Assembly (NCBI RefSeq): GCF_003704095.1
Contig: NW_020844913.1
Coordinates: forward strand, 1 to 64,000
Reading direction: 5' to 3'
Source: Pocillopora damicornis
Taxonomy: Eukaryota
Length of the DNA: 64,000 nucleotides
This document shows, in pieces, positions 35,268 to 49,099 of the stretch. Below the pieces are notes generated by a model. The model was not told where the DNA came from. It saw only the letters and a list, made by a program, of their open reading frames with translations, and did no database searches. Made by a program: the position numbers and the translations under genes. The stretch's first letter is position 1. The number at the start of each line of letters is the position of its first letter.

Positions 35268-36182
35268 AAATTTTTGAATTTAGAAATGCGCTGTTATCCA
35301 CAATCTTTTAACTGCCTAGACACAGATGAACTGGTAAAGTCTCGTCAGTCAACTGTTATGATTGTCCATTTCAACGGTGCGATAAGCGAATGGGGTGACT
35401 TCCGCGTTGCTTAGAGTTAAATTGCGCTGTAGATATTCGGGTTATCTATTTGCTACATCATTGAAAGATCGTGGTGAAAGAGAAGAACTACCAGTGATCG
35501 TCATCAAGACAATACGCCCCGTATTCTATTTTTGGTGTAACAAAAAACCCGCAGTTTGGTTATCTACTCGCTTATTTGGCTTTTTGTATGCATCTCAGAA
35601 TTTCATTCTAAAAAGCTACACCACTGTGACAACTCATTTCCAGACTGTTTCATCTTCATCTGCAGTGAATCGAACAAGATCGTCTGTTCAAGTTGGCAGA
35701 CTGATTGACACGACATGTAGGTGCGATAATATGGTAGCAGTAATGCCAAAAAAAAAACCTTGCTACTTCTCTTGTCTTGCCTAAGTGTTGGAAATTAGGG
35801 AAAAGTACCTCTCCGTTCTTTCGGCGGTATAATGCACGCAGCATTTTGCGCGCGCAGCGTTCTACTTTTGAAACAAGGCGGTAAGGCCTTTTTTAAAGAA
35901 AGACTCCAAAGCTAACGTTTTGTTTACATAGCCTTAGCGGTACTATCATTACTGTTCAAAATTTACAAAAAGCGACCTTGACTTTACGGCAATTACTGAT
36001 TTACAGGGAGATGAGGTGATCTCCATTATTTGTAATTATTTAATTCACGAGGCACGACGTCAAATGTACTAATTCGTTATTGTGACGTAGAATTAGTATT
36101 GCGAAACTTTTCTTCACATTAGGAGTTGAGTTGCAGTGCGGAGACAAAATTTTCTTATAAGAGAGATTTTCTACAAGGAGAA

Positions 36183-39100
36183 ATGAAATTGTGGGTCGGG
36201 ATTGTGTTCTTGGTTGTGTCGACACAACTGGGAATCAATGCTCGGCCCATTCCAAGATCAAAACCACTACTAAATGATGGTAGGTAAACATTCCTTGGGT
36301 TTCCTACTGAATAATATACATGAAAAAATTACTCAGTTCTGATTGGTTAAGATAAGTGTAGTTTTCAGGTAATTCAATATAGAAGAGGGTTAATTCAGTG
36401 CAAAGAAGTTACAAACCAGACATTCTGATTGGTCAATAATCAAATGCGAGCCTTGGATGTCGCAACATTTGGATACGCTGAAAATTTGCGAGCGAACAAT
36501 GGCCGGCGTTTTGAGTAGGTTTTCTTTCGCCACCGTAATAGAGCAGCTGAGAAACAGCTCTAATAACGAAAACACTACCTTTTGGTTTTCGGTTTGGAAA
36601 AAGTGGTGTTTAGATAAAGGAATTGCTAAGGAAATCGAAAATTACGAGCCGACCCAGCCTAACACTTTACTCGAGCCATTCTACGCCAAAATTAAAAACA
36701 AACATGGTTAAACCTCGCAAACGACGATTCCATTTCATCGAAAGTGTTTCGGACACAGACTGAACAATTCCTTGAACTGTTTCGCCGGACTTTGAACTTT
36801 TTTGCGTCTTAGAGATGTGAAAATATTGTATATTATTGTTTTGATTGTACGCGGTTGTTTTGACCGAACGCGCACTGTCACTTGCAGGTTTGAATAAATT
36901 ATTTTTGCACTTGATGCGCGCGCTTTGCTTCTGCATAATAGGCCATCTTCCAGTTGTGTACTTAGTTGCTAAGCCTTTGATTTGGAGTGAGGCTGAAGGT
37001 GACCTTGTTGTGGTAGAGACCAGTATCCAATTAGCATGATAACAAAGTAATTTGCATTTGAAAAGCAGCAAGGTTTGTATCATAACAAGGTCACCCTTAG
37101 CCTCATTCCTGTTCAAAGGCTTGGCATCCAAGCACACAACTGTAAAATGGACTATTATGACAAGCTATCTCGTATTTTTTCATGTATATTATTAATACGA
37201 AATCACATGATTTTCTTTGTGCAATTTGGAATAAATAAGCACTCGTTAATTTTTTCAAAGACCACAAATTGCACTCGCCCAAAGGGCTCGTGCAATTTTG
37301 TTAGTCTTTGAGAAAAAATTACTCGTGCTTATTTATTGCACTCGAAATCATGTGATTACCTATATAATAATAATTAATAGGTCAACCGGGTATATCGTCT
37401 TGTGGGGTCACCAACCAATGACTGGAGCTTATGAACGAAGGCCAATCATTGTAACATTATTAATTATAGAAAGTGATAGCACAAAGTTGGCAGACGTATC
37501 CTGCTTCAGGCGCAGGAAAATGTAATCGACAAGATCATAGCGCGAATTACTGTGCCAGACATAGAACTTGGTAGGGCAAAACCAAAGTCAGTAATAAAAA
37601 ACAGCTCTAATCGCCGAAGGTCATGTTGATAAAGCATTTTTAAATTCTAATTTCCTCATTTTTTATGCGGTTGGGGAGGGTACATCGAACACTAGGGGTG
37701 AATTTGTTCGACATAATCAGTAATAAAAAGAGCTGCACGCACTTCTTTAATGGATTGCGCGACCCAAGTGATGCTAAAATTTTATTGAGTAGTTTATCTG
37801 AAGCAAAGTGACTAATAAAGCAACGACTGCTGAAAAGCGCTTGTGTTAAAACTGCTTTTAAGTAGGTTTTAAGTACTTTGCAGCCAGCTTTCAGCGTTTG
37901 TCCAGGAATGAAACAGTCGAACTGAGGTGTTCAAAAGATAGGCTGTATATCCATGTTAGACAACTGTCAATAGGCAGTAATTGATGTAAATTCCCGACAA
38001 CTTTCAATTTTTCAAAACCTTCCCTGATTCTTTGGCAAGTCTGTAGTGTTGCGACCGTTGCTATGGCTCCAGGGCGTTAGCCCACGAAAGTCCGTGATGT
38101 GTACATACGTTTTTTTAACTCTGTTATTCTAAGTTGTTTAGTTTCTGATACTCTTACGTCGTGCGCGTAGATTTTCATTTTAAGGTAGTTAAAGTAAAGT
38201 ACTCTTAAGCTCACGATAAGCCAGTTCTGGCTCGGCGAAATGGTATCAAAGGTTTCAAAGAGTAACGGTAGGGTTCAGAATGATAATTTACGTATGGCTG
38301 GACACTGACACTAAATTTCCTAAAGAGTAGTTAAGATGAAAAGCTATCAGCCAACAGTCTTCCACAGTCTGATGACGTCAGTTTTAGACTTCCCTAGCAT
38401 TAAAGGTAGGTACCCCGAAAATGATCCACCTCCGAATGAAGATGGTATTAACGACTCTTTGCATGATAAAGGTGGAGCCGATGACGATGAAGAAGCCAAC
38501 TGGACTAACGGTGATGATTACAACGAAAATGCCGAGTGGAGAGACAAAGAAGGAGGTGACTCTATCGATGGTGAAGGTAGGCCCCCACGACCTTGAAGAT
38601 TAACATCGGAATTGAGATGATACTAATGACCATCTTGGTGCTATAGGTGATCCGGATGACGACGAAGACGCAGAGTGGAGAGACGGTGATTATGATCACT
38701 CTATCGATAGTGAGGGTAAGTTCCGTACAACAGACATTGACAATGACGTTGATACAAATGAATCCCTAAGTACTTAAAGCAATCCCCATGAAACTTATCA
38801 CGCAGAATCCACATCGGAGTAAAGATGATACTAATAACCCTCTTTGTGCTTAAGGTGAGCCCAATGACGATGAAGATGCCAAGTGGAGCGACGGTGATGA
38901 CTTAATCAACAGTGAAGGTAAGCCCCATGAAAGTACGGGTTTATATGAGAATGACACTGATGCTAATGATATCCCTGCTTAAAGCACTAACAGCTTACTT
39001 TTTGTTAAAGGTGAGCCGGATGTCGATGAAGATGCTGAGTTAAGTGGCGGTGATCGTGATGAGTCTAGCGATGCTGATGGTGAGCTAGAAAATGAGAATT

Positions 39101-42100
39101 TATATGTCGATAACGTCTATACTAATGACCATCTTGGTATTTAAGGTGAACTCGATAGAACTGAAGACTCAACTGAAAACAATGATGATCCTGATGATTA
39201 CTTCGGTATTGAGGACGAGCACAGTGATTATTCTAATGGTAAGCTTCCTGAAACTCAAAATTTTTTTATCAGAATAAGAATGATACTTATGTTACCTTTA
39301 GTACTAAAGGGGAGCCCCAGATAGTTCCACGAAACTTATAATGGTGAATAACCAAAGAGAGGGAGGACACTTACGTTTCTCTTGATGCTCTAGGTGAACT
39401 AGATGGCGATGAAGATATCGAAAGGAGTGAAAGTGAGGATGAGGACCTCATCCATAGTGAAGGTAAGCCTCAGAAAACTTTTTCGTGGAGATTGACATCG
39501 AAATAAAGATGATACTAACGGCTCTCATTGTGCTAAAGGTGAGCCAGATGGCGATGAAGATGCCGAGTGGAGTGACAGTGAAGAAGATGACTTCATTGAT
39601 AATGAAGGTAAGTCTTAGGAAAGTAACACAAAGATTGACATCGCAATTAGGATGATGCAATAACTCTCTTTATGCTAAAGGTGAGCTGGGCGGCGACGAA
39701 GATGTCAAATGGAGAGATAATGACGATATTGACCTCGTGGATAGCGACGGTAAGACCCACTAAACTTATCATGAAGATTGACATGGGAATTAAGATGATA
39801 CTATGGACTCTCTTTGTACTTAAGGTGAGCAAAATAGCGATGAAGATGCCGATTGGATAGACAGTGAAGATGATGACTTCATCGACAATGAAGGTAAGCT
39901 TAATGAAAGTAACATGGAGTTTGGCATTGGAGTTAAAATGATACAAATGACTATTTTTGTGCTAAAGGTGAGCCGGATGACGATAAAGATGTCGAGTGGA
40001 GAGATAGTCACGATGATGGCCCCGTCGATAGTGATGGTAAGCCCCATAAAACTTATCCTGAGAATTGACATCGGAATAACGATGACATTAACAACTCTCT
40101 TTATGCTACAGGTGAGACTGATGGTGATGAAGATATCGAGTGGAGTGACAGTGATGATAATTCTATTGATAGTGAAGGTAACCCTTATGAAACAAATCAT
40201 AAATTCCACATCAGAACTAGAATTACACTAACGACTCTCTTTTTGCCAAAGGTGAGCCGGATGGCGATGATGATACCGATGGGAGAGTCAGTGACGATAA
40301 TGACCTCATCAATAGTGAAGGTAGGCCTCATAAAAATTACCATAGAGATTCACATCATAATCAAGATGATGTAAACGGCTCTCCCTGTTCTAAAGGTGAG
40401 CCAGATGGCGATAAAGATGTCGAGTGGAGGGACACTAAAGATGATGACCTTATCGATCGTAAAGGTAAGCATTATGAAAGTAACGTGAAGATTAACATCG
40501 GAATTAAGATGATACAAATGACTATCTTTGTGCTAAAGGTGAGCCGGATGGCGATGAAGATGTCGAATGGAGAGACAGTGACGATGATGACCTCGTTGAT
40601 GATGATGGTAAGTTCCCCGAAACTTATCCTAAAGATTAACATCGAATTTAAGATGATACTAACGACTTTATTTGTGCTACAGGTGAGCGAGATAGCGATG
40701 AAGATGCCGATTGGAGAGACGGTGAAGATGATGACTTCATGGATAGTGAAGGTAAGCTTTATGAAAGTAACATGAAGTTTGATATCGGAGTTAAGATAGC
40801 ACAATTGACTATCTTTGTGCTAAAGGTGAGCCGGATGGCGACGAAGATGTCGAATGGAGAGACAGTGACGGTAATGATCTCGTCGCTAGTAACGGTTAGC
40901 CTAATGAAACTTATCATGAAGATTCAAAACGGAATCAAGATGATACTAACGACTCTCTTTGTGCTACAGGTGAGCCACATAGCGATGAAGATGCCAATTG
41001 GATAGATGGTGAAGATGGTGATTTTATCGATAGTGAAGGTAAGCTTTATGAAAGTAACATGGAGTTTGACATCGGAATTGAAATGATACAAACGGCTTTC
41101 TTTATACTAAAGGTGAGCAGGATGACGATGAAGATGTCGAGTGGAGAGACAGTCAAGATGATGGCCCCGACGATAGTGATGGTAAGCCTCATGAAACTTT
41201 TCATAAAAATTGGCTTCGGAATAAGGATGATATTAACAACTCTCTTTGTGCTACAGGTGAGACTGATGGTGATGAAGATATCGAGTGGAGTGACAGTGAT
41301 GATAATTCTATTGATAGTGAAGGTAACCCTTATAAAACAAATCATAAATTCCACATCAGAACTAGGATTACACTAACGACTCTCTTTTTGCCAAAGGTGA
41401 GCCGGATGACGATGCAGATACCGATGGGAGAGACCGTGAAGATAATGACCTCATCGATAGTGAAGGTAAGCCTAATAAAAGTTACCATGAAGATTCACAT
41501 CGTAATCAAGATGATGTAAACGACTCTTCCTGTTATAAAGGTGAGCCAGATGGCGATGAAGATGTTGAGTGGAGAGACAGTGAAGATGATGACCTTATTG
41601 ATAGTGAAGGTAAGTCTTACGAAAGTAACGTGAAGATTGACATCGGAATTAAGATGATGCAAATGACTATCTTTGTGCTAAAGGTGAGCCGGATGGCGAT
41701 GAAGATGTCGAATGGAGAGACAGTGGCGATGATGACCTCATTGATAATGATGGTAAGCTCACCGAAACTTATCATGAAAATTGACATCGGAATTAAGATG
41801 ATACTAACGACCCTCTTTGTGCTACAGCTGAGCAAAATAGCGACGAAGATGCCGAGTGGAGCGACAGTAAAGATGATGACTTCATGGATAGTGAAGGTAA
41901 GCTTTATGAAAGTAACATGGAGTTTGACATCGGAATTAAGATGATACAAATGGCTTTCTTTGTGCCAAAGGCAAGCCGGCTGGCGATGAAGATGTCGAAT
42001 GGAGAGACAGTGACTATGATGACCTAGTCGATAGTGATGGTAAGTCCCATGAAACTTTTCATGAGAATTGACATCGGAATTAGAATGATATTAACAACTC

Positions 42101-45100
42101 TTTTTGTGCTATAGGTGAGGCACATGGCGGTGAGGATCTCGAGTGGAGTGACAATGATGACATTTCTATTGATAGTAAAGGTAACCCCAATGAAAGTAAT
42201 CACGAAGTTCACATCAGAATTACGATAATACTTACAGCTCTCTTTGTGCTAAAGGTGAGCCGGATGGTGAGAAAGACACCGATTGGAGAGACAGTGAGGA
42301 TGATGACCTCATCGATAATGAAGGTAAGCCTCAGAAAACTTTTTCATGGAGATTGACATTGAAATTAAGATGAACTGAAGGCTGTCATTGTACTAAAGGT
42401 GAGCTAAATGACGATGAAGATGTCGAGTGGAGTGGCAATAAAGATAAAGACTTCATTGAAGGTAAGCCTTATAAAAGGAACATGAATATTGACATCGGAA
42501 TTAAAATGATACAAATGACTATCTATGTGCTTAAGGTGGGCAGGATGTCGATGAAGATGTCGAATGGAAAGAGAGTGACGATGATGGCCAAGTTGATAAC
42601 GATGGTAAACTCTCCAAAACTTATCATGAAGATTGACATCGGAACTAAGATGATATTAACAACTCTCTTTGTGCTACAGGTGAGCGAGATAGCGATGAAG
42701 AGGCCGAGTGGAGGGACAGTGAAGATGATGACTTCATGGATAGTGAAGGTAAGCTCTATGAAAGTAACATAGAGTTTGACATCGGAATTAAGATGATACA
42801 AATGGCTTTTGTTGTGCTAAAGGTGAGCCGGATGAATATAAAGATACCGAGTGGAGAGACAGTGAGGATGATGACCTCATCGATAATGAAGGTAAGCCTC
42901 AGAAAACTTTTTTATGGAGATTGACGTTGAAATTAAGATGATACTGAAGGCTCTCATCATGCTAAAGGTGATGGCGATGAAGATGTCGAGTGGAGTGGCA
43001 GTGAAGATGATGACTTCGTTGATACTGAAGGTAAGCCTTATGAAAGTAACATGAAGATTGACATCGAAATTAAAATGATGCAAATGGCTCTCTTTGTGCC
43101 AAAGGTGGACAGGATGTCGATGAAGATGTCGAGTGGAGAGACAGTGACCATGATGACCTCGTTGATAATGATGGTAGGCTCCCTGAAACTTATAAAGACT
43201 GACATCGGAATTAAAATGATACTAACGACTCTCTTAAACGACTCTCCCTGTTATAAAGGTGAGCCAGATGGCGATGAAGATGTCGAGTGGAGAGATAGTG
43301 AAGATGATGACTTCATCGATAGTGAAGGTAAGTCTTACGAAAGTAACGTGAAGATTGACATCGGAATTAAAATGATACAAATGACTATCTTTCTGCTAAA
43401 GGTGAGCAGGATGGTGACGAAGATGTCGAATGGAGAGACAGTGACGATGATGACCTCGTTGATAATGATGGTAAGCTTCCTGAGACTTAGCATAAAGATT
43501 GACATCGGAATTAAGATGATATTAACGACTCTGTTTGTGCTAAAGGTGAGCCAGATAGCGATGAAGATGCCGATTGGAGAGACAGTGATGATGATGACTT
43601 AATCGATAGTGAAGGTAAGATTTATGAAAGTTACTAAAGTTTAACATCGGAGCTAAGACCATACAAATGACTATCTTTGTGCTACAGGTAAGCAGGATAA
43701 TGATGAAGATGTCGAGTGGAGAGACAGTCACGATGATGGCCTTCTCCACAGTGATGGTAAGCCCTATGAAACTTATCCTGAAAATTGACATCGGAATAAG
43801 GATGATATTAATAACTCTCTTTGTGCTTCAGCTGGGGCAGATGGTGATGATGATATCGAGTGGAGTGACAATAATGATAATTCTGTTGATAGTAAAGGTA
43901 ATCCTTATGAAACAAATCATAAATTCCAAATCAGAACTAGGATTATACTAACGACTCTTTTTTTGCCAAAGTTGAGCCGGATGGTGATGAAGATATTGAT
44001 GGGAGAGACAGTGAAGATAATAACCTCATTGGTAGTAAAGGTAAGCCTTATGAAAGTTACCATGGAGATTCACATCGCAATCAACATGATGTAAACGACT
44101 CTCCCTGTTATAAAGGTGAGCCAGATGGCGATGAAGATGTCGAGTGGAGAGATGGTGAAGATGATGACTTCATCGATAGTGAAGGTAAGCCTTACGAAAG
44201 TAACGTGAAGATTGACATCGGAATTAAGATGATACAAATGACTATCTTTCTGTTAAAGGTATGCCAAGTGGCGATGAAGATGTCGAATGGAGAGACAGTG
44301 ACGATGATGACCTCGTTGATAATGATGGTAAGCTTCCTGAGACTTATCATAAAGATTGACATCGGAATTAAGATGATATTAACGACTCTCTTTGTGCTAC
44401 AGGTGAGCCAGATAGCGATGAAGATGCCGATTGGAGAGACAGTGATGATGATGACTTAATCGATAGTGAAGGTAAGCTTTATGAAAGTAACTTCGAGTTT
44501 GACATCGGAATTGAGATGATGCAAATGGCATTCTTTGTGCTAAAGGTGAGCAGTATGGCGATGAAGATGCCGAATGGAGACACAGTGACGATGATGACCT
44601 CGTCGATAATGATGGTAAGCTCCCCGAAACCTATCACGAAGATTGACACCTGAATTAAGATGATACTAACGACTCTCTTTGTGCTACAGGTGAGCGACAT
44701 AGCGATGAAGATGCCAAGTGGAGGGAAAATGAAGATGATGACTTCAGCGATAGAACAGGTAAGCTTTATGAAAGCATTATGGAGTCTGACATCGGAATTA
44801 AGATGATAAAAGTGATTATCTTTTTTGCTAAAGGTGAACTGGATGGTGATAAAGACACCGAATGGAGTGACAGTGAGGATGATGACCTCATCGATAGTGA
44901 AGGTAAGCTTCATAAAAGCTATTATGGAGATTAACATTGCAATCAAAATTATATTAACAACTCTCCTTGTGCTTAAGGTGAGCTAGAAGGTGATGAAGAT
45001 ATCGAGTGGAGGGACAGTGAGGATGATGACCTCATTGATAGTGAAGGTAAGCCTCAGAAAACTTTGTTATGGTGATTGACGTCAAAATTAAGGTGATACT

Positions 45101-45940
45101 AACGGCTCTGTTTGTGCTAAAGGTGAGCCAAATGGCTATGAGGATGTCGAGTGGAGTGACGGTGGTGATGACTCTATTGATAGTGAGGGTAAGTTCCATG
45201 AAAGTAAGGTTTTCTCTCTCAATAACGCCAAAAGTAATGAGCTCTTGGCATTAAAGGTGAATTTGATGGAACGGAAGACCTTGATCACCATGATGATGAT
45301 AGAATTGACTACTCTGGTATCGAAGAGGAGCTCGTTGAAAATGAAGATTCGAATCAGAAAGAGGATACTCAGGACTCTTTCGATTTTGATGTTAAGCTTT
45401 GTTAAAGAAGATGAGCTCCAAGGTACGGGTGATTCGAATCATAAAGAAGATTTTGCTAATGACTCTTTATATATCTAAGGTGGTTCTGATGATAGAGATT
45501 GGGACCAGAATGAAGATGACTACTCTTTCGGCACTGAGGACGACCCTTATGAAAGTGAACATCCCAAACAGAATGAAAGAAATGCTGATGACTCCTCTTC
45601 TGAAGGTGAATCAAATGAGATTTTAGATTCAAATCATCACGTAGATGATATTGACAATTAATTCAAAACGATTGTAGATATCGAAGGTGCTCTCGATGCT
45701 AGAGACGACTTTCCAGAAACCGAAGCTTCAGATCCAGATACCGAAGATATTCGAAACGTCCCTAAATTTGTGGAGCATCACGCGCAATTTGAGGATACAG
45801 AGTGGAGTGATGATGATGACAAGGAGGGTTCTGGAGGCTTTGGAGTTCATAATAATAATGAAGGCATAGAAACTGCATGGTGGAATGACAACAATGAAAA
45901 CACTTTCGATGAGTTTGAAAATAATTTGGAGGAAATCTGA
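36183..45940 (+). CDS. Secreted hyper-acidic (Asp/Glu-rich) tandem-repeat protein encoded by ~50 exons; candidate skeletal organic matrix / Ca2+-binding protein
   Basis: Exon 1 (36183-36279) encodes MKLWVGIVFLVVSTQLGINA-RPIPRSKPLLND (signal peptide) with a phase-1 gtaggt donor. Phase-1 acidic exons then start at about 38388, 38647, 38855, 39011, 39146, 39394, 39539, 39681, 39825, 39968, 40112, 40252, 40396, 40539, 40683 and roughly every 144 bp to 44978 and 45123. They are followed by 45257-?, 45480-45605 and a terminal exon 45678-45940 (...FDEFENNLEEI*), with AATAAA at 46153. Every repeat exon I translated is stop-free with only in-frame indels. Confidence 0.8.
36313..37370 (+). mobile_element. 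Non-autonomous Crypton-like (tyrosine recombinase/DUF3504-type) element in intron 1 of the acidic-protein gene
   Basis: 5' ttctgattgg motifs; remnant ORF MAGVLSRFSF...NENTTFWFSVWKKWCLDKG...IENYEP...LLEPFYAKIKNKHG resembling the N-terminal region of Crypton-A/DUF3504 proteins; 3' hairpin ~37200-37358. Family assignment is from recall. Confidence 0.55.
36938..37155. mobile_element. MITE nested in the Crypton-like element
   Basis: Long imperfect TIRs: ataggccatcttccagttgtgtacttagttgctaagcctttga versus tcaaaggcttggcatccaagcacacaactgtaaaatggactat. Confidence 0.75.
38406..45256 (+). repeat. ~144-bp exon+intron tandem repeat, ~46 copies, with higher-order blocks of 1145 bp and 857 bp
   Basis: Unit is gtgagccggatggcgatgaagatgtcgagtggagagacagtgaagatgatgacctcatcgatagtgaag | gtaagc...gatgatactaacgactctctttgtgctaaag. 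Diagnostic variants recur at offsets of 1145 (40112/41257, 40539/41684) and 857 (43259/44116). Confidence 0.95.
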
Positions 45941-48004
45941 AACTTAAAGTGGAATGAGGACTTTTCTTTTTTTTCATGATAATGATGTTAATTTGATAAC
46001 TGTCAACTTGCTTTCGTGGAATCTATATTTGCGGGAGGGGGGTCTTTGATCAAGATTTTGCAGTGAAGGAAATATGTGGCCAATGAATGAGTGGAAATTT
46101 TGGTTTCTTTTTCTTAAAGTACAACTCCTTCTTCAGTTCTGGTATTCATAACAATAAAACTCTTTGACAGGTTGACAACACAATTTCTCTAAAGTGTGAT
46201 AATTCTCAACCAGTTCATGGATGATGGCCGATCATGCTTTGCGATAAATTTTTTGTCGTTTTCGCTCACTGCGTATTCACTGATCAAGCGCCTGACTTAG
46301 GCTATGGTTCAGTCGGCTTTAGGCTCAGCATCAAACATATTGTATTGCACAAATTTCATGTTATTAACGGTTCTCACTTTATTAGGAGTACCATTCATGA
46401 CCACGCTGAAAGCAAAATGATTATTCTTATCTATTGCATACCCCATGCATTTTTGTCAATTTTTCCGTGTTTTTAAGTTTTTTTTAGTTATTTCTCCCTC
46501 GTTCTCAATCCTTTCTCTTCCGTGCGTCACAAGAGAATAGTTGCTCCCTCAATTCGTGGACTTTTCTACAGATGTTTTGGTTTGAGTTGTGCTAATTGTT
46601 GCCCAGGGAGAGCCAAGTGGTTCTGACAGTTATATACGTACACAAGCTCCTAATATGTCTAATCCAAACGAAGTGCGAAACACCAGATAGACGACGCATT
46701 GGTGTTTTTAATTCGATTACTTTCCAAGAATATTATATCGACTTTTTTTGCATTATGAAAGGTTAGCAACAAAACACAACAACTAAGGAAATGGCAGGTA
46801 ACCATATATATCATGCATAGTGCAAGTAATCCAAAATATAAAGTCAGGGGCGCTCGTTTGTCGTAATCAAACTACACCGTGTTTTAAATCGGATAGATTA
46901 ACAATTTATCGGCTGCTACACTTGTTTTTGCCGTCAAGTCAAAAGGTCAATATTTTATTGAAACATTGCACTCTTCAAAATACTTCGTTAGGAAAATAAT
47001 ACTTTTCTTTTCCGGCATTAATTCAGTTACTACTGCAAAAGACTAATTTATTGCTAGAGACGACTGTCTGACATTTTTACCTTCGGCAATTTTCTGCACC
47101 ATGCGGCGATAATTACGTGATAAAGGGTTACTAAGTTGAGGTAAACACCTTTAAAAAGAACTCTTATTCCATGTTATGTTGTTGAAGCGATATCACTAAG
47201 CCGGTGGAGCTCAGTTTCCTTGATCATGTAAAGGAAAATATAAAATATAATTCGAAGACGAGTGGGTGAAAAGGGAAATAAGAGAGTTTATCTTCCCCCT
47301 CACTACTCCAACGTTAGCCTTCGCTCAATCTTGCGGTTAACCACTCACGATAAACAATTTCTCACGCGTGTCACTAGGTGCACGGACCAATATTTATCAT
47401 TAAGTGCGCTTTAAAATGAAGATTAAGTCACCATTTCAATATCAAAAATAGAAAGTAATCTTTTCTGGTGTCTTGCTCTGCTCTTAACAGAACCTTGTGA
47501 AAAGTAATAAGCATTTGCTTATGGACATCGCCGTCACTGTCATACGAAACCACACCCACTCGTTTCTAATCTTTTCCTTCGTCAAAGCGCCTAATTAGGC
47601 TACAGTTTTCAAAACAGTGAATGGAGTCCAATTTACGTCACGTCAGGGCATATGTGGCAAGGGAAAATGCTTAAAAAACTCTTAATGGGGAGTGCATTAA
47701 TAGTCCATTTTTGAGCCCATTGGTGAGCTGATTGAGAACATCAGCACCTACATCGAAGAATTTTAATGTGATATGCCTTCAGGGAATATTATCGCAGAAT
47801 AGAGAAGCATTTCAACAGAGGTCTTATGCAATTCCACACAACCGAACTTTGGTTCAAGATTACGCGAGAGTCGAGCTATACGGTAATTATTCACGCTAGC
47901 TTAAATTTCGTAGCCCTTAAAGGACTAATTGCTGTTGCACAGACCGTAGAGGAACTAGGAGCTTGATTCTCTTTGCAAAAGCTAACTTTGATAAAACAGA
48001 AAAT

Positions 48005-49099
48005 ATGATGAACTCAAACCAGACGCAGCCAAATTTGACAGGAGCTTCAGATATAGGGACAGTAACAATTGTGCAAGTGACATCGTATGCGCTCATAACA
48101 ATCCTCGGGACTGTTGCAAATTTACTGTTGTATGGTGCACTTCTGAGAAAAAAACAACGAAGCCCCAGCGAATATTTCGTGCTGAATCTGGCTTTTACCG
48201 ATCTCATGACGTGTGTAGTTGGGATTCCTTTAGATATGGCCGAAATTTTAATCCAGCGTTGGCCATTTGGAGCCTTCATGTGCAAAGTTGTGTACCCATT
48301 TCAGACGGCTTTAATAGGAGTATCAGTTGCAACATTGACATGCATGGCCATCGAGCGATATCGGGCCATTGTGACACCTTTCAAGCCAATGATAACAAAA
48401 AGAATGGTTAAGGTTGTGATATCCGCTGTTTGGTGCATATCTGGTGCTCTTGTGTCACCTTACATCGTTGTTCTTGAACATAAACGCGAACAGCTACAGT
48501 GCACCGAAGCGTGGCCAAGTGAGAACTATCCAAAAATGTTCACTATGTGTGTTTTTCTACTCTTTTACTCTCTGCCTCTGTGTATTATTGCCCCGGCATA
48601 CATTTGCATTGGATTCAGATTGTACTCTGACGGAAAAAAGATGAAACGATTCAGCATTAAACAAGGTGCTGGAAATCAGTCGTTCCGAAAGCTGGTGAGG
48701 CAGCGAACAAGGACGAATGTCATTATTGTGAAAACGTTTTTGTTCGGTGCTGTAGCGTTCTCCCTGTGCTTGTTACCCTATCACATTATGTGGTTATGGG
48801 CTGACTTCGGAAATGGTGCTCACTGGAGTTATTTTGGAGATGTACTGGTGTTTGCGAACGCTTTGGTGTATTTCAACAGTTTAGTGGACCCATTTATTTT
48901 TGGAGGCACTGTGATACGACACAATTGGAGTAAAACATGTGCGGCCATGCTTCAAAGGTGCTTGAATATTCAAATGGTTAACGAACGGCGAAAGACAAAC
49001 AACAACGTATCCCTAAAACAACAAAACTGCGATAATTCAACAAAAAAGCCGTACTTTAAGCTTCCAAACGCCCCCATTATTTATACTTCGTCCGTATGA
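48005..49099 (+). CDS. Intronless class A GPCR, neuropeptide-receptor-like (QRFP/NPFF/galanin-receptor-like; 364 aa)
   Basis: N-glycosylation sequons (NQT, NLT), NLAFTD, WPFGAFMCK, ERY, ECL2 CTEAWP, CLLPYH and NSLVDPFIF. First ATG is at 48005. Confidence 0.93.
   Translation: MMNSNQTQPNLTGASDIGTVTIVQVTSYALITILGTVANLLLYGALLRKKQRSPSEYFVLNLAFTDLMTCVVGIPLDMAEILIQRWPFGAFMCKVVYPFQTALIGVSVATLTCMAIERYRAIVTPFKPMITKRMVKVVISAVWCISGALVSPYIVVLEHKREQLQCTEAWPSENYPKMFTMCVFLLFYSLPLCIIAPAYICIGFRLYSDGKKMKRFSIKQGAGNQSFRKLVRQRTRTNVIIVKTFLFGAVAFSLCLLPYHIMWLWADFGNGAHWSYFGDVLVFANALVYFNSLVDPFIFGGTVIRHNWSKTCAAMLQRCLNIQMVNERRKTNNNVSLKQQNCDNSTKKPYFKLPNAPIIYTSSV

What the first reader, a model, noticed from the sequence alone, without database searches (positions are those of the whole stretch)
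36183..45940. Hidden ~50-exon gene: a tandem exon-intron array encoding a secreted hyper-acidic repeat protein
Seen: the apparent 7-kb satellite splits into a 69-nt segment and a 73-76-nt segment per unit. The 69-nt segments I translated are all stop-free in one frame, and their indels are 3 or 6 nt (63-nt exons at 38855 and 42968; 66-nt exons at 40112, 41257 and 45123). The other segments carry recurring TGA/TAA stops and frameshifting lengths (76 nt at 39463-39538, 73 nt at 39608-39680, 74 nt at 40465-40538). They always start GT and end AG, often with TACTAAC (branch-point consensus) and a pyrimidine tract. The AG stays fixed even where the following bases change (AG|CT 41828 and 43832, AG|GC 41971, AG|TT 43972). 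A phase-matched signal-peptide exon lies 2 kb upstream, and a terminal exon plus AATAAA lie downstream. Spliced, this gives very roughly 1,200-1,300 aa of GEPDGDEDVEWRDSEDDDLIDSE repeats (13/23 acidic, near-invariant Trp). Established: Asp-rich secreted proteins (coral CARPs/SAARPs, mollusc aspein) act in CaCO3 biomineralisation. Inference: this is an unannotated skeletal matrix or Ca2+-binding protein that repeat-masking and ORF finders would miss.
Basis: partly seen in the sequence, partly recalled or inferred. Interest (0 to 1): 0.95.

Follow-up and report, generated by a model that had tools for sequence, protein, structure and literature searches.

The report
Spliced 49-exon hyper-acidic coral gene
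What looks like a 7-kb satellite is a real, strongly transcribed coral gene whose about 45 tiny 69-base exons are spliced into a secreted protein of about 1,230 residues that is 45% Asp/Glu. Relatives are already predicted automatically in sister corals, and its role in skeleton building is unproven.

Summary
Window 36183-45940 (+) holds a 49-exon gene. It has a signal-peptide exon, 46 internal exons (45 of them 63/66/69-nt repeats at a 144-bp period) and two 3' exons. Every internal exon is a multiple of 3, open in one frame, phase 1-1 and flanked AG|..|GT. The 73-85-nt spacers carry stops, and 22 of 40 have lengths that shift the frame.

RNA contigs from three runs of two studies show 12 of the predicted GT..AG joints, including 40607|40683, and loose contig ends support three more.

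The product is 1,228 aa: 30% Asp, 15% Glu, no Cys, 45 Trp, net charge about -479.

It is not truly hidden. The Pocillopora verrucosa ortholog is annotated in three fragments (1240+311+201 aa). A Stylophora relative is XP_022794478.1, 'PFC0760c-like isoform X9'. This scan already reported the paralog on another contig (s1-765095).

The family appears restricted to Pocilloporidae and has no known domain. The array differs in copy number between congeners (45 vs 65 repeats).

The skeletal-matrix reading is untested. The Stylophora relative is absent from a published list of 60 skeleton proteins. My best reading is a secreted, disordered polyanion that binds Ca2+; where it acts is unknown.

The parts
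36107..36182 (+). 5' UTR (minimum extent)
   Evidence: An RNA contig of run X1 covers 36107-36189 (table 8). I see no ATG in 36107-36182 on reading the sequence.
36183..36279 (+). Exon 1: start codon, signal peptide and a short conserved basic/Pro segment; it ends in phase 1
   Evidence: The translation has one Lys, then a run of 10 mostly hydrophobic residues, then a c-region ending ..GINA before RP. It is 81% identical to exon 1 of the paralog and 79% to the N-terminus of Stylophora XP_022794478.1. The RNA joint 36279|38472 is seen in runs X1 and X3. SignalP was not available.
36280..38471 (+). Intron 1 (2,192 nt, GT..AG), holding repeat or transposon-like sequence
   Evidence: Joint 'skips 2192, GT..AG'. 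The unique part 37500-38299 has depth 29 in X1, against 2,600-192,000 over bins that hold exons. 36300-37300 is deep in all four runs, as expected of a dispersed repeat.
38472..39238 (+). Five divergent 5' exons: 38472-38576 (105 nt), 38647-38715, 38855-38917, 39011-39079, 39146-39238 (93 nt, non-repeat)
   Evidence: All are multiples of 3 and open in phase 1. Every joint between them and on to 39394 is seen in RNA contigs (table 5).
39394..45188 (+). Core array: 41 exons of 63/66/69 nt separated by 40 introns of 73-85 nt. The period is 144 bp, with higher-order blocks of 2, 6, 8 and 14 units.
   Evidence: Exon table; statistics; block structure. RNA joints shown up to 41113; reads were laid only up to 42099. 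3' of that, support comes from the sequence criteria, from the ortholog's 65 intact exons, and from the share of sampled 31-mers held by RNA runs. That share is 0.30-0.32, against about 0.26 expected by my own estimate if all exons are transcribed.
40895..40969 (+). Intron with a weak donor, GTTAGC. If it is retained, the frame reads G|GT TAG, an immediate stop.
   Evidence: In P. verrucosa the first gene call ends exactly here (L016:7877). The joint 40894|40970 was not among the 15 joints shown.
45257..45404 (+). Dead, skipped exon-like segment, homologous in its 5' part to exon 39146-39238
   Evidence: Its acceptor is intact, but the donor position reads TTAAGC and the frame runs into TAA. 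The same is true in P. verrucosa. The P. verrucosa model P0018 joins the equivalent of 45188 directly to 45481.
45481..45606 (+). Penultimate coding exon (126 nt, phase 1-1)
   Evidence: Open in phase 1 and collinear with residues of P0018 / XP_066029015.1.
45678..45940 (+). Terminal coding exon with the conserved C-terminal domain; stop TGA at 45938-45940
   Evidence: The acceptor at 45676-45677 is inferred from P0018, which reads ..SSSE|DIVGALD... A second in-phase AG lies 9 nt downstream, at 45685-45686. The 83-aa translation matches P0001 (96% identity), P0002 (56%) and P0003 (57%), and nothing else.
46153..46158 (+). AATAAA polyadenylation signal
   Evidence: It is the only AATAAA in the 660 nt after the stop, 213 nt downstream. 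The 3' UTR itself was not covered by reads.

Best explanation
This is a real, highly transcribed 49-exon gene of a Pocillopora coral. An N-terminal signal-peptide exon is spliced to about 45 tandem 23-codon exons. All are phase 1-1, with a Gly codon split as G|GT. Two unique 3' exons follow.

The product is a secreted, Cys-free, intrinsically disordered polyanion of 1,228 residues (45% Asp+Glu, one Trp per repeat). It has no retention signal, membrane anchor or known domain.

The array grew, and still changes, by unequal crossing-over of whole exon-plus-intron cassettes. Selection keeps the frame, the splice sites and the acidic composition, and constrains individual residues only loosely.

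Inferred mechanism: outside the cell, or inside secretory vesicles, it binds Ca2+ and other cations with low affinity and high capacity. The compartment is not shown. My odds are:
- about 0.3 for the calcifying space or skeleton matrix;
- about 0.35 for another secretion (mucus, gland or cnidocyst content);
- the remainder unknown.
For: - Exon anatomy.
- GT..AG joints at 12 predicted junctions, in contigs of poly(A)/oligo-dT RNA runs X1, X3 and X9 from two studies, plus three more from loose ends.
- Exon depth is 100 to several thousand times the unique-intron depth in X1.
- No stop-making variant among the 105 observed changes.
- All exon indels are 3 or 6 nt, against 1-2 nt in introns.
- dN/dS is about 0.54 between paralogous units.
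- Against the P. verrucosa ortholog, exons differ by 1.5% and introns by 2.5%.
- The P. verrucosa locus has 65 intact repeat exons.
- The same signal peptide, repeat type and C-terminal domain occur in the paralog on contig C3414 and in Stylophora XP_022794478.1.
- Composition.
- The high-capacity, low-affinity Ca2+ binding of Asp/Glu-rich proteins is established knowledge, as summarised in PMC3748352.
Against: - Function is inferred from composition only.
- There is no cell-type or protein-level evidence.
- The Stylophora relative is absent from the 60 skeleton proteins of PMC7115838, although its repeats contain Lys/Arg and so should give tryptic peptides.
- Reads were laid only on 36100-42099, so joints 3' of 41113 and the 3' end rest on sequence and on the sister species' gene model.
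- This assembly may have collapsed near-identical units, so the true length may be greater.
- The signal peptide was judged by eye, not by a predictor.
Confidence: 0.8

Rival explanations
1. It is a genuine skeletal organic matrix protein. Calicoblasts would secrete it and it would be occluded in aragonite, where it nucleates or shapes CaCO3 as CARPs/SAARPs or aspein are thought to do.
For: It has a signal peptide, 30% Asp and very high transcript depth in adult colony metatranscriptomes. [quoted passage not shown] Known skeleton-occluded coral proteins are acidic and secreted (PMC3748352).
Against: The NCBI name probably reflects composition only. There is no sequence relation to CARP/SAARP: the C-terminal domain finds only three clusters, and the named ones are pocilloporid. 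The Stylophora relative is not among the 60 skeleton proteins identified against the same RefSeq protein set. Neither its name nor its accession occurs in the held supplements of the Stylophora cell atlas or in any coral paper.
Confidence: 0.25
2. It is a secreted polyanion with a role unrelated to the skeleton. Examples are a packing or counter-ion protein of secretory granules or cnidocyst capsules, or a mucus component.
For: It is absent from the skeleton proteome of the relative. It has no Cys, no adhesion or ECM domain and no anchor. The family is restricted to one coral family, although all scleractinians calcify. An atlas feature search gave only weak look-alikes among secreted repeat glyco- and phosphoproteins; scores were below 0.8, which is noise level.
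Against: No positive evidence for any particular compartment. Lineage-specific skeletal proteins are common in corals (PMC9532382 abstract).
Confidence: 0.3
3. The array is a splice-tunable gene. Every exon is symmetric (phase 1-1), and 33 of 41 begin GTGAGC. Each spliced junction therefore regenerates a consensus donor (AAG|GTGAGC), like a recursive splice site. Exons could then be removed one by one, giving mRNAs with variable repeat numbers.
For: The motif counts are. One joint, 41181|41397, skips the 66-nt exon that has the weak donor GTAACC (run X3). Several isoforms are predicted for the Stylophora relative, whose record is labelled isoform X9. Skipping any exon keeps the frame.
Against: The dominant joints join neighbouring exons. 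GTGAGC is also simply the coding of Gly-Glu-Pro. The skip joint has only 24 nt on its short side, and the source animals may carry a different unit order. The 1,220-nt skip 40036|41257 is ambiguous because exons 40112 and 41257 are identical.
Confidence: 0.15
4. It is a non-coding minisatellite, or a decaying pseudogene, whose open frame is a by-product of GAT/GAA-rich repeats.
For: A second frame is also open in 33 of 41 exons. Exons are only slightly more conserved than introns between units.
Against: Spliced poly(A) transcripts are seen at very high depth. Splice sites and 3n lengths are perfect in 46 of 46 internal exons here and in the ortholog's repeat exons. Stop-making changes are depleted. 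dN/dS is below 1.
Confidence: 0.01

Closest known systems
[quoted passage not shown]
   Same: They share the signal peptide (79-81% identity), the 23-residue acidic repeats with one Trp, and the C-terminal domain (56-96% identity). The paralog has the same 69-nt exon / ~75-nt intron cassettes.
   Different: The Stylophora protein has about 400 non-repeat residues after the signal peptide that have no match in this window. It looks closer to the C3414 paralog. The P. verrucosa ortholog has 65 repeats against 45 here and is annotated in three pieces, apparently without the signal-peptide exon. None of these has been studied experimentally, as far as the paper searches show.
Coral acid-rich skeletal proteins (CARP4/5, SAARP1/2, acidic SOMP, SAP1/2)
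   Same: They are secreted, Asp/Glu-rich and presumed low-affinity Ca2+ binders (PMC3748352).
   Different: SAARPs and CARPs have about 20% Asp, in two Asp-rich regions separated by conserved non-acidic regions. This protein has 30% Asp plus 15% Glu in about 45 regular repeats, and it has no such non-acidic regions. No sequence similarity was found. Those proteins were identified in skeleton by mass spectrometry; this family was not.
Spider silk genes with iterated exon-intron cassettes (Nephila Flag, Argiope MaSp2)
   Same: In both, the repetitive structural protein gene duplicates intron together with exon, so introns within one gene are nearly identical (Hayashi and Lewis 2000, as cited in PMC3563967). 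Here intron identity between units (0.72-0.81) tracks exon identity (0.75-0.82).
   Different: The cassettes here are far smaller (69+75 nt) and far more numerous (45-65). The product is an acidic secreted protein, not a silk.
Tropoelastin and other genes built of symmetric phase 1-1 exons with a split Gly codon (from my own knowledge, not checked here)
   Same: All exon borders split a codon the same way, so any exon can be skipped or duplicated without breaking the frame.
   Different: There is no sequence or compositional relation. The elastin exons are not a recent tandem array.

Membership tests
Pocilloporid secreted acidic Trp-repeat family (XP_022794478.1 / XP_066029015.1 / C3414 paralog) | Shared N-terminal signal peptide followed by the RPIPR..PL..DG segment | tested here: met
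   79% identity over 33 residues to P0003; 81% to the paralog's exon 1.
Pocilloporid secreted acidic Trp-repeat family (XP_022794478.1 / XP_066029015.1 / C3414 paralog) | Shared C-terminal domain | tested here: met
   phmmer over 1.84 billion representatives gave P0001 at E 7e-28, P0002 at 3e-09 and P0003 at 4e-09, and nothing else. The P. verrucosa member is collinear with the last three repeat exons and both 3' exons.
Pocilloporid secreted acidic Trp-repeat family (XP_022794478.1 / XP_066029015.1 / C3414 paralog) | 23-residue acidic repeats, each encoded by one 69-nt phase 1-1 exon | tested here: met
   For Stylophora only the protein repeats were seen, not the gene structure.
CARP/SAARP coral acid-rich skeletal proteins | [quoted passage not shown] | tested here: not met
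   The architecture is 45 regular repeats between a signal peptide and one short C-terminal domain. The C-terminal domain has no relative outside the three matching clusters. No direct alignment to a SAARP sequence was run.
CARP/SAARP coral acid-rich skeletal proteins | Detected in cleaned skeleton by mass spectrometry | tested here: not met
   This holds for the Stylophora relative only: no accession XP_0227944xx other than unrelated ones, and no 'PFC0760c-like' entry, in Table 1 of PMC7115838. Nothing was tested for Pocillopora.
Skeletal organic matrix protein in the wide sense | Expression in calicoblastic cells | not testable with these tools
   The runs are whole-colony metatranscriptomes. 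The held supplements of the Stylophora cell atlas do not contain the accession.
Recursive splice sites (AG|GTRAGT ratchet points) | An acceptor immediately followed by a consensus donor | tested here: met
   33 of 41 core exons begin GTGAGC directly after AG.
Recursive splice sites (AG|GTRAGT ratchet points) | Use of the regenerated donor, so that the exon is removed from the mature RNA | tested here: inconclusive
   The main joints keep the exons. One low-confidence skip, 41181|41397, was seen.

The most novel reading that the evidence does not exclude
The array may be a rapidly evolving, splice-tunable polyanion. Cassette copy number changes between sister species (45 vs 65). Every spliced junction also regenerates a strong donor, so one gene could yield a ladder of secreted acidic proteins of different lengths. 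This abundant protein could be a lineage-specific regulator of pocilloporid calcification that skeleton proteomics has overlooked.
Probability: 0.12. Interest if true: 0.7.

Novelty: new member of a known kind. Interest (0 to 1): 0.42.

Why it matters
The case shows that a block which repeat finders call a 144-bp minisatellite can be one of the most heavily transcribed protein-coding genes of a reef coral. It also shows that automatic annotation breaks such genes into fragments and loses the signal peptide.

The product is more acidic than the coral acid-rich skeletal proteins compared here (30% Asp here, against about 20% for SAARPs). It is confined to Pocilloporidae and changes repeat number between congeners. 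That makes it a reasonable candidate for lineage-specific control of Ca2+ handling or secretion, and a clean natural example of cassette (exon plus intron) amplification under frame-only selection.

It does not by itself open a long-standing question. Relatives are already in public protein sets, and the paralog was already reported by this scan.

Tried and rejected
- Pfam on seven exon translations, given by reference: no family, even at E 1.
- The search for homologous proteins with the Stylophora relative, residues 430-822 and then 1-430: only the query came back. Acidic words swamp the candidate list, and longer isoforms fall outside the length band.
- ESM Atlas look-alikes: best score 0.79, which is noise level.
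- Paper searches for 'PFC0760c' with Stylophora or coral, for the accession prefix, and in the held supplements of the Stylophora cell atlas: nothing on this gene. PMC12152308 and PMC12019164 mention only generic acid-rich proteins.
- The idea from another note that the introns are intronised copies of the exon. The consensus exon and consensus intron align at 45 of 66 positions, z 3.6 against full shuffles. With the splice-signal-like ends held fixed, z is only 1.6 and 149 of 2,000 shuffles do as well, so it is not demonstrated.
- Megablast at 93% identity between the window and the P. verrucosa locus found nothing long, because the arrays are rearranged. blastn and flank alignments were used instead.
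Low-depth contigs starting at 38387 mark the edge of a 660-bp segment that P. verrucosa has and this window lacks.
- The 1,220-nt 'skip' 40036|41257 was rejected as evidence of exon skipping, because exons 40112 and 41257 are identical.
Full report
**Observation**

Tandem Repeats Finder sees one array at 39378-45193, with periods of 144 and 287 bp and 72-76% matches. GC skew turns strongly positive only over 38-46 kb. I aligned every unit to one reference unit and then tabulated the model.

The model has 46 internal exons between 38472 and 45188. Each is preceded by AG and followed by GT. Each has a length that is a multiple of 3 (63, 66, 69, 93 or 105 nt). Each is open in the frame that completes a split codon, mostly G|GT = Gly.

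In the 41-exon core:
- 0 exons have a stop in the coding frame.
- The 40 spacers are 73-85 nt long, and 22 of them are not multiples of 3.
- 19 spacers have an in-phase stop.
- Donors are mostly GTAAGC (25 of 41), and acceptors are mostly CTAAAG|.

Exon indels are 3 or 6 nt, while intron indels are mostly 1-2 nt. Of the 198 possible single-base changes to the exon consensus, 105 are present somewhere in the array, but none of the 8 that would make a stop.

**Transcription and splicing**

Thirteen RNA runs hold part of the stretch. Four poly(A) metatranscriptomes hold 0.24-0.32 of its sampled 31-mers. By my own estimate, about 0.26 is expected if only exon-internal words are present.

I laid contigs of four RNA runs on 36100-42099. 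Three runs from two studies (X1, X3, X9) show GT..AG joints at these 12 junctions:
- 36279|38472
- 38576|38647
- 38715|38855
- 38917|39011
- 39079|39146
- 39238|39394
- 39607|39681
- 39749|39825
- 39893|39968
- 40320|40396
- 41038|41113

Loose contig ends additionally fit 39462|39539, 40177|40252 and 40464|40539.

In X1 the bins that hold exons have depths of thousands to about 190,000. The unique part of intron 1 has depth 29. The random-primed run X5 shows only low-depth unspliced contigs.

Exon 1 joins 38472 directly.

**Gene model**

The exons are: 36183-36279; 38472-38576; 38647-38715; 38855-38917; 39011-39079; 39146-39238; 39394-39462; 39539-39607; 39681-39749; 39825-39893; 39968-40036; 40112-40177; 40252-40320; 40396-40464; 40539-40607; 40683-40751; 40826-40894; 40970-41038; 41113-41181; 41257-41322; 41397-41465; 41541-41609; 41684-41752; 41828-41896; 41971-42039; 42115-42180; 42255-42323; 42399-42461; 42536-42604; 42680-42748; 42823-42891; 42968-43030; 43105-43173; 43259-43327; 43402-43470; 43546-43614; 43688-43756; 43832-43897; 43972-44040; 44116-44184; 44259-44327; 44403-44471; 44546-44614; 44690-44758; 44834-44902; 44978-45046; 45123-45188; 45481-45606; 45678-45940.

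The last two exons and the skipping of the exon-like stretch 45257-45404 are taken from the P. verrucosa RefSeq protein XP_066029015.1 (P0018). That protein is collinear with 44823-45940. The skipped stretch has TTAAGC where a donor should be, and it runs into TAA, in both species.

The CDS is 3,687 nt, giving 1,228 aa: Asp 30%, Glu 15%, Lys+Arg 5.9%, no Cys, 45 Trp, net charge about -479.

Exon 1 reads as a classical signal peptide: one Lys, ten mostly hydrophobic residues, then a small residue at -1. The C-terminus has no hydrophobic tail and no KDEL-like end. I read both directly from the sequence; no predictor was run.

The joined spliced protein was not sent to any search tool. Exons were searched one by one, by reference.

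**Relatives**

The 83-aa terminal exon, scored against 1.84 billion representative proteins, finds three clusters:
- fragments 96% identical, including P. verrucosa XP_066029015.1;
- ORF fragments of a second gene;
- Stylophora pistillata XP_022794478.1, 'protein PFC0760c-like isoform X9'.

The Stylophora protein has the same signal peptide, about 17 repeats of 23 residues with one Trp each, and the same C-terminus. It also has about 400 unique residues that have no match in this window.

In this genome (234,350,878 bases in 4,393 contigs) the signal-peptide exon, the 144-bp unit and the C-terminal exon each occur at exactly two loci. These are this window and C3414:172515-178680. The second locus has the same 69-nt exon / ~75-nt intron cassettes. 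It is the gene already reported by this scan as s1-765095.

Non-repeat flanks are 98.5% identical to P. verrucosa.

**The orthologous locus**

The P. verrucosa locus (L016) carries 65 repeat exons, all intact, against 45 here. One 287-bp dimer, the equivalent of 40539-40825, is amplified about 17 times there. The highest RNA depth lies in exactly those bins.

Either copy number really differs between the species, or this assembly has collapsed near-identical units.

Three adjacent gene calls (1240, 311 and 201 aa) cover that array. The first ends exactly at the weak donor GTTAGC, where read-through gives G|GT TAG. The array is therefore annotated in the sister species, but in fragments and apparently without the signal-peptide exon.

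**Evolution**

- Units resemble each other best at offsets of 2, 6, 8, 14 and 18. Introns are about as alike as exons (0.72-0.81 against 0.75-0.82). Whole cassettes are therefore duplicated at the DNA level.
- Across 20 independent nearest-unit pairs, dN/dS is about 0.54.
- In collinear parts of the two species, exons differ by 1.5% and introns by 2.5%, with 8 synonymous and 15 non-synonymous changes.
- Selection is strict on frame, splice sites and acidity, and loose on residues.

**Function**

Nothing tested here places the protein in the skeleton.
- No Pfam family matches any exon.
- The family is unrelated to CARP/SAARP, whose hallmark is two Asp-rich regions between conserved non-acidic regions (PMC3748352).
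- The Stylophora relative is missing from the 60 skeleton proteins identified against the same RefSeq set (PMC7115838). Its repeats do contain Lys/Arg cleavage sites.
- No paper in the library mentions the gene.

From composition, binding of Ca2+ and other cations is close to certain physically. The site of action is open.

**Precedents for the architecture**

[quoted passage not shown] Genes made of symmetric phase 1-1 exons, such as tropoelastin, are a second precedent; that one rests on my own knowledge.

**Verdict**

The claims 'hidden' and 'skeletal matrix' are not established. This is a new, larger paralog within an uncharacterised, lineage-restricted family of secreted acidic repeat proteins that is already present in public predictions.

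Noticed in passing
window 39394-45188 (exon starts): 33 of 41 core exons begin GTGAGC directly after the acceptor AG, so each spliced junction reads AAG|GTGAGC, a consensus donor (a recursive-splice-site-like motif). One low-confidence RNA joint, 41181|41397, skips the 66-nt exon that has the weak donor GTAACC.
   Followed up: partly
window 40895-40900; L016:7873-7877: The donor here is the weak GTTAGC. If the intron is retained, the frame reads G|GT TAG, which would truncate the protein after 16 repeats. The first gene call in P. verrucosa ends at exactly this point.
   Followed up: partly
window 38379-38390 vs L016:103-762: P. verrucosa, and the source of low-depth contigs in run X9, carries about 660 bp that this window lacks. 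The segment includes one more 69-nt exon-like unit with AG/GT flanks (L016:462-530). This is either a deletion in this species or an assembly difference.
   Followed up: partly
window 40539-40825 vs L016:2925-7729: One 287-bp two-cassette block is present once or twice here but about 17 times, nearly identical, in P. verrucosa. RNA contig depth in this window peaks in the same bins (up to 192,000). This suggests either real expansion in other Pocillopora or collapse in this assembly.
   Followed up: partly
window 36300-37300 (intron 1): Deep RNA contig coverage in all four runs, including those without the spliced mRNA. There are also an inverted repeat around 36960-37110 and a non-canonical joint 36355|36756 (GT..CA). 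It looks like dispersed repeat or transposon sequence sitting in intron 1.
   Followed up: no
window 45257-45404: An exon-like segment related to exon 39146-39238 has lost its donor (TTAAGC) and runs into TAA in both Pocillopora species. It is a dead cassette left inside the last long intron.
   Followed up: yes
window about 48004-49098 (from L016:13259-14353): The next gene downstream in P. verrucosa is a single-exon 364-aa product with a 7tm_1 (rhodopsin-type GPCR) Pfam hit. By the flank alignment it should lie at about these window coordinates. I did not check this in the window.
   Followed up: no
core-array introns 39463-45122: 18 of 40 introns are exactly 75 nt, and several are open in phase; for example 40321-40395 and 41466-41540 read through without a stop. 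Their retention would insert 25 residues in frame. The exon and intron consensus sequences share their ends and an ATGAAGAT core, but overall similarity is not significant once the ends are fixed (z 1.6).
   Followed up: partly
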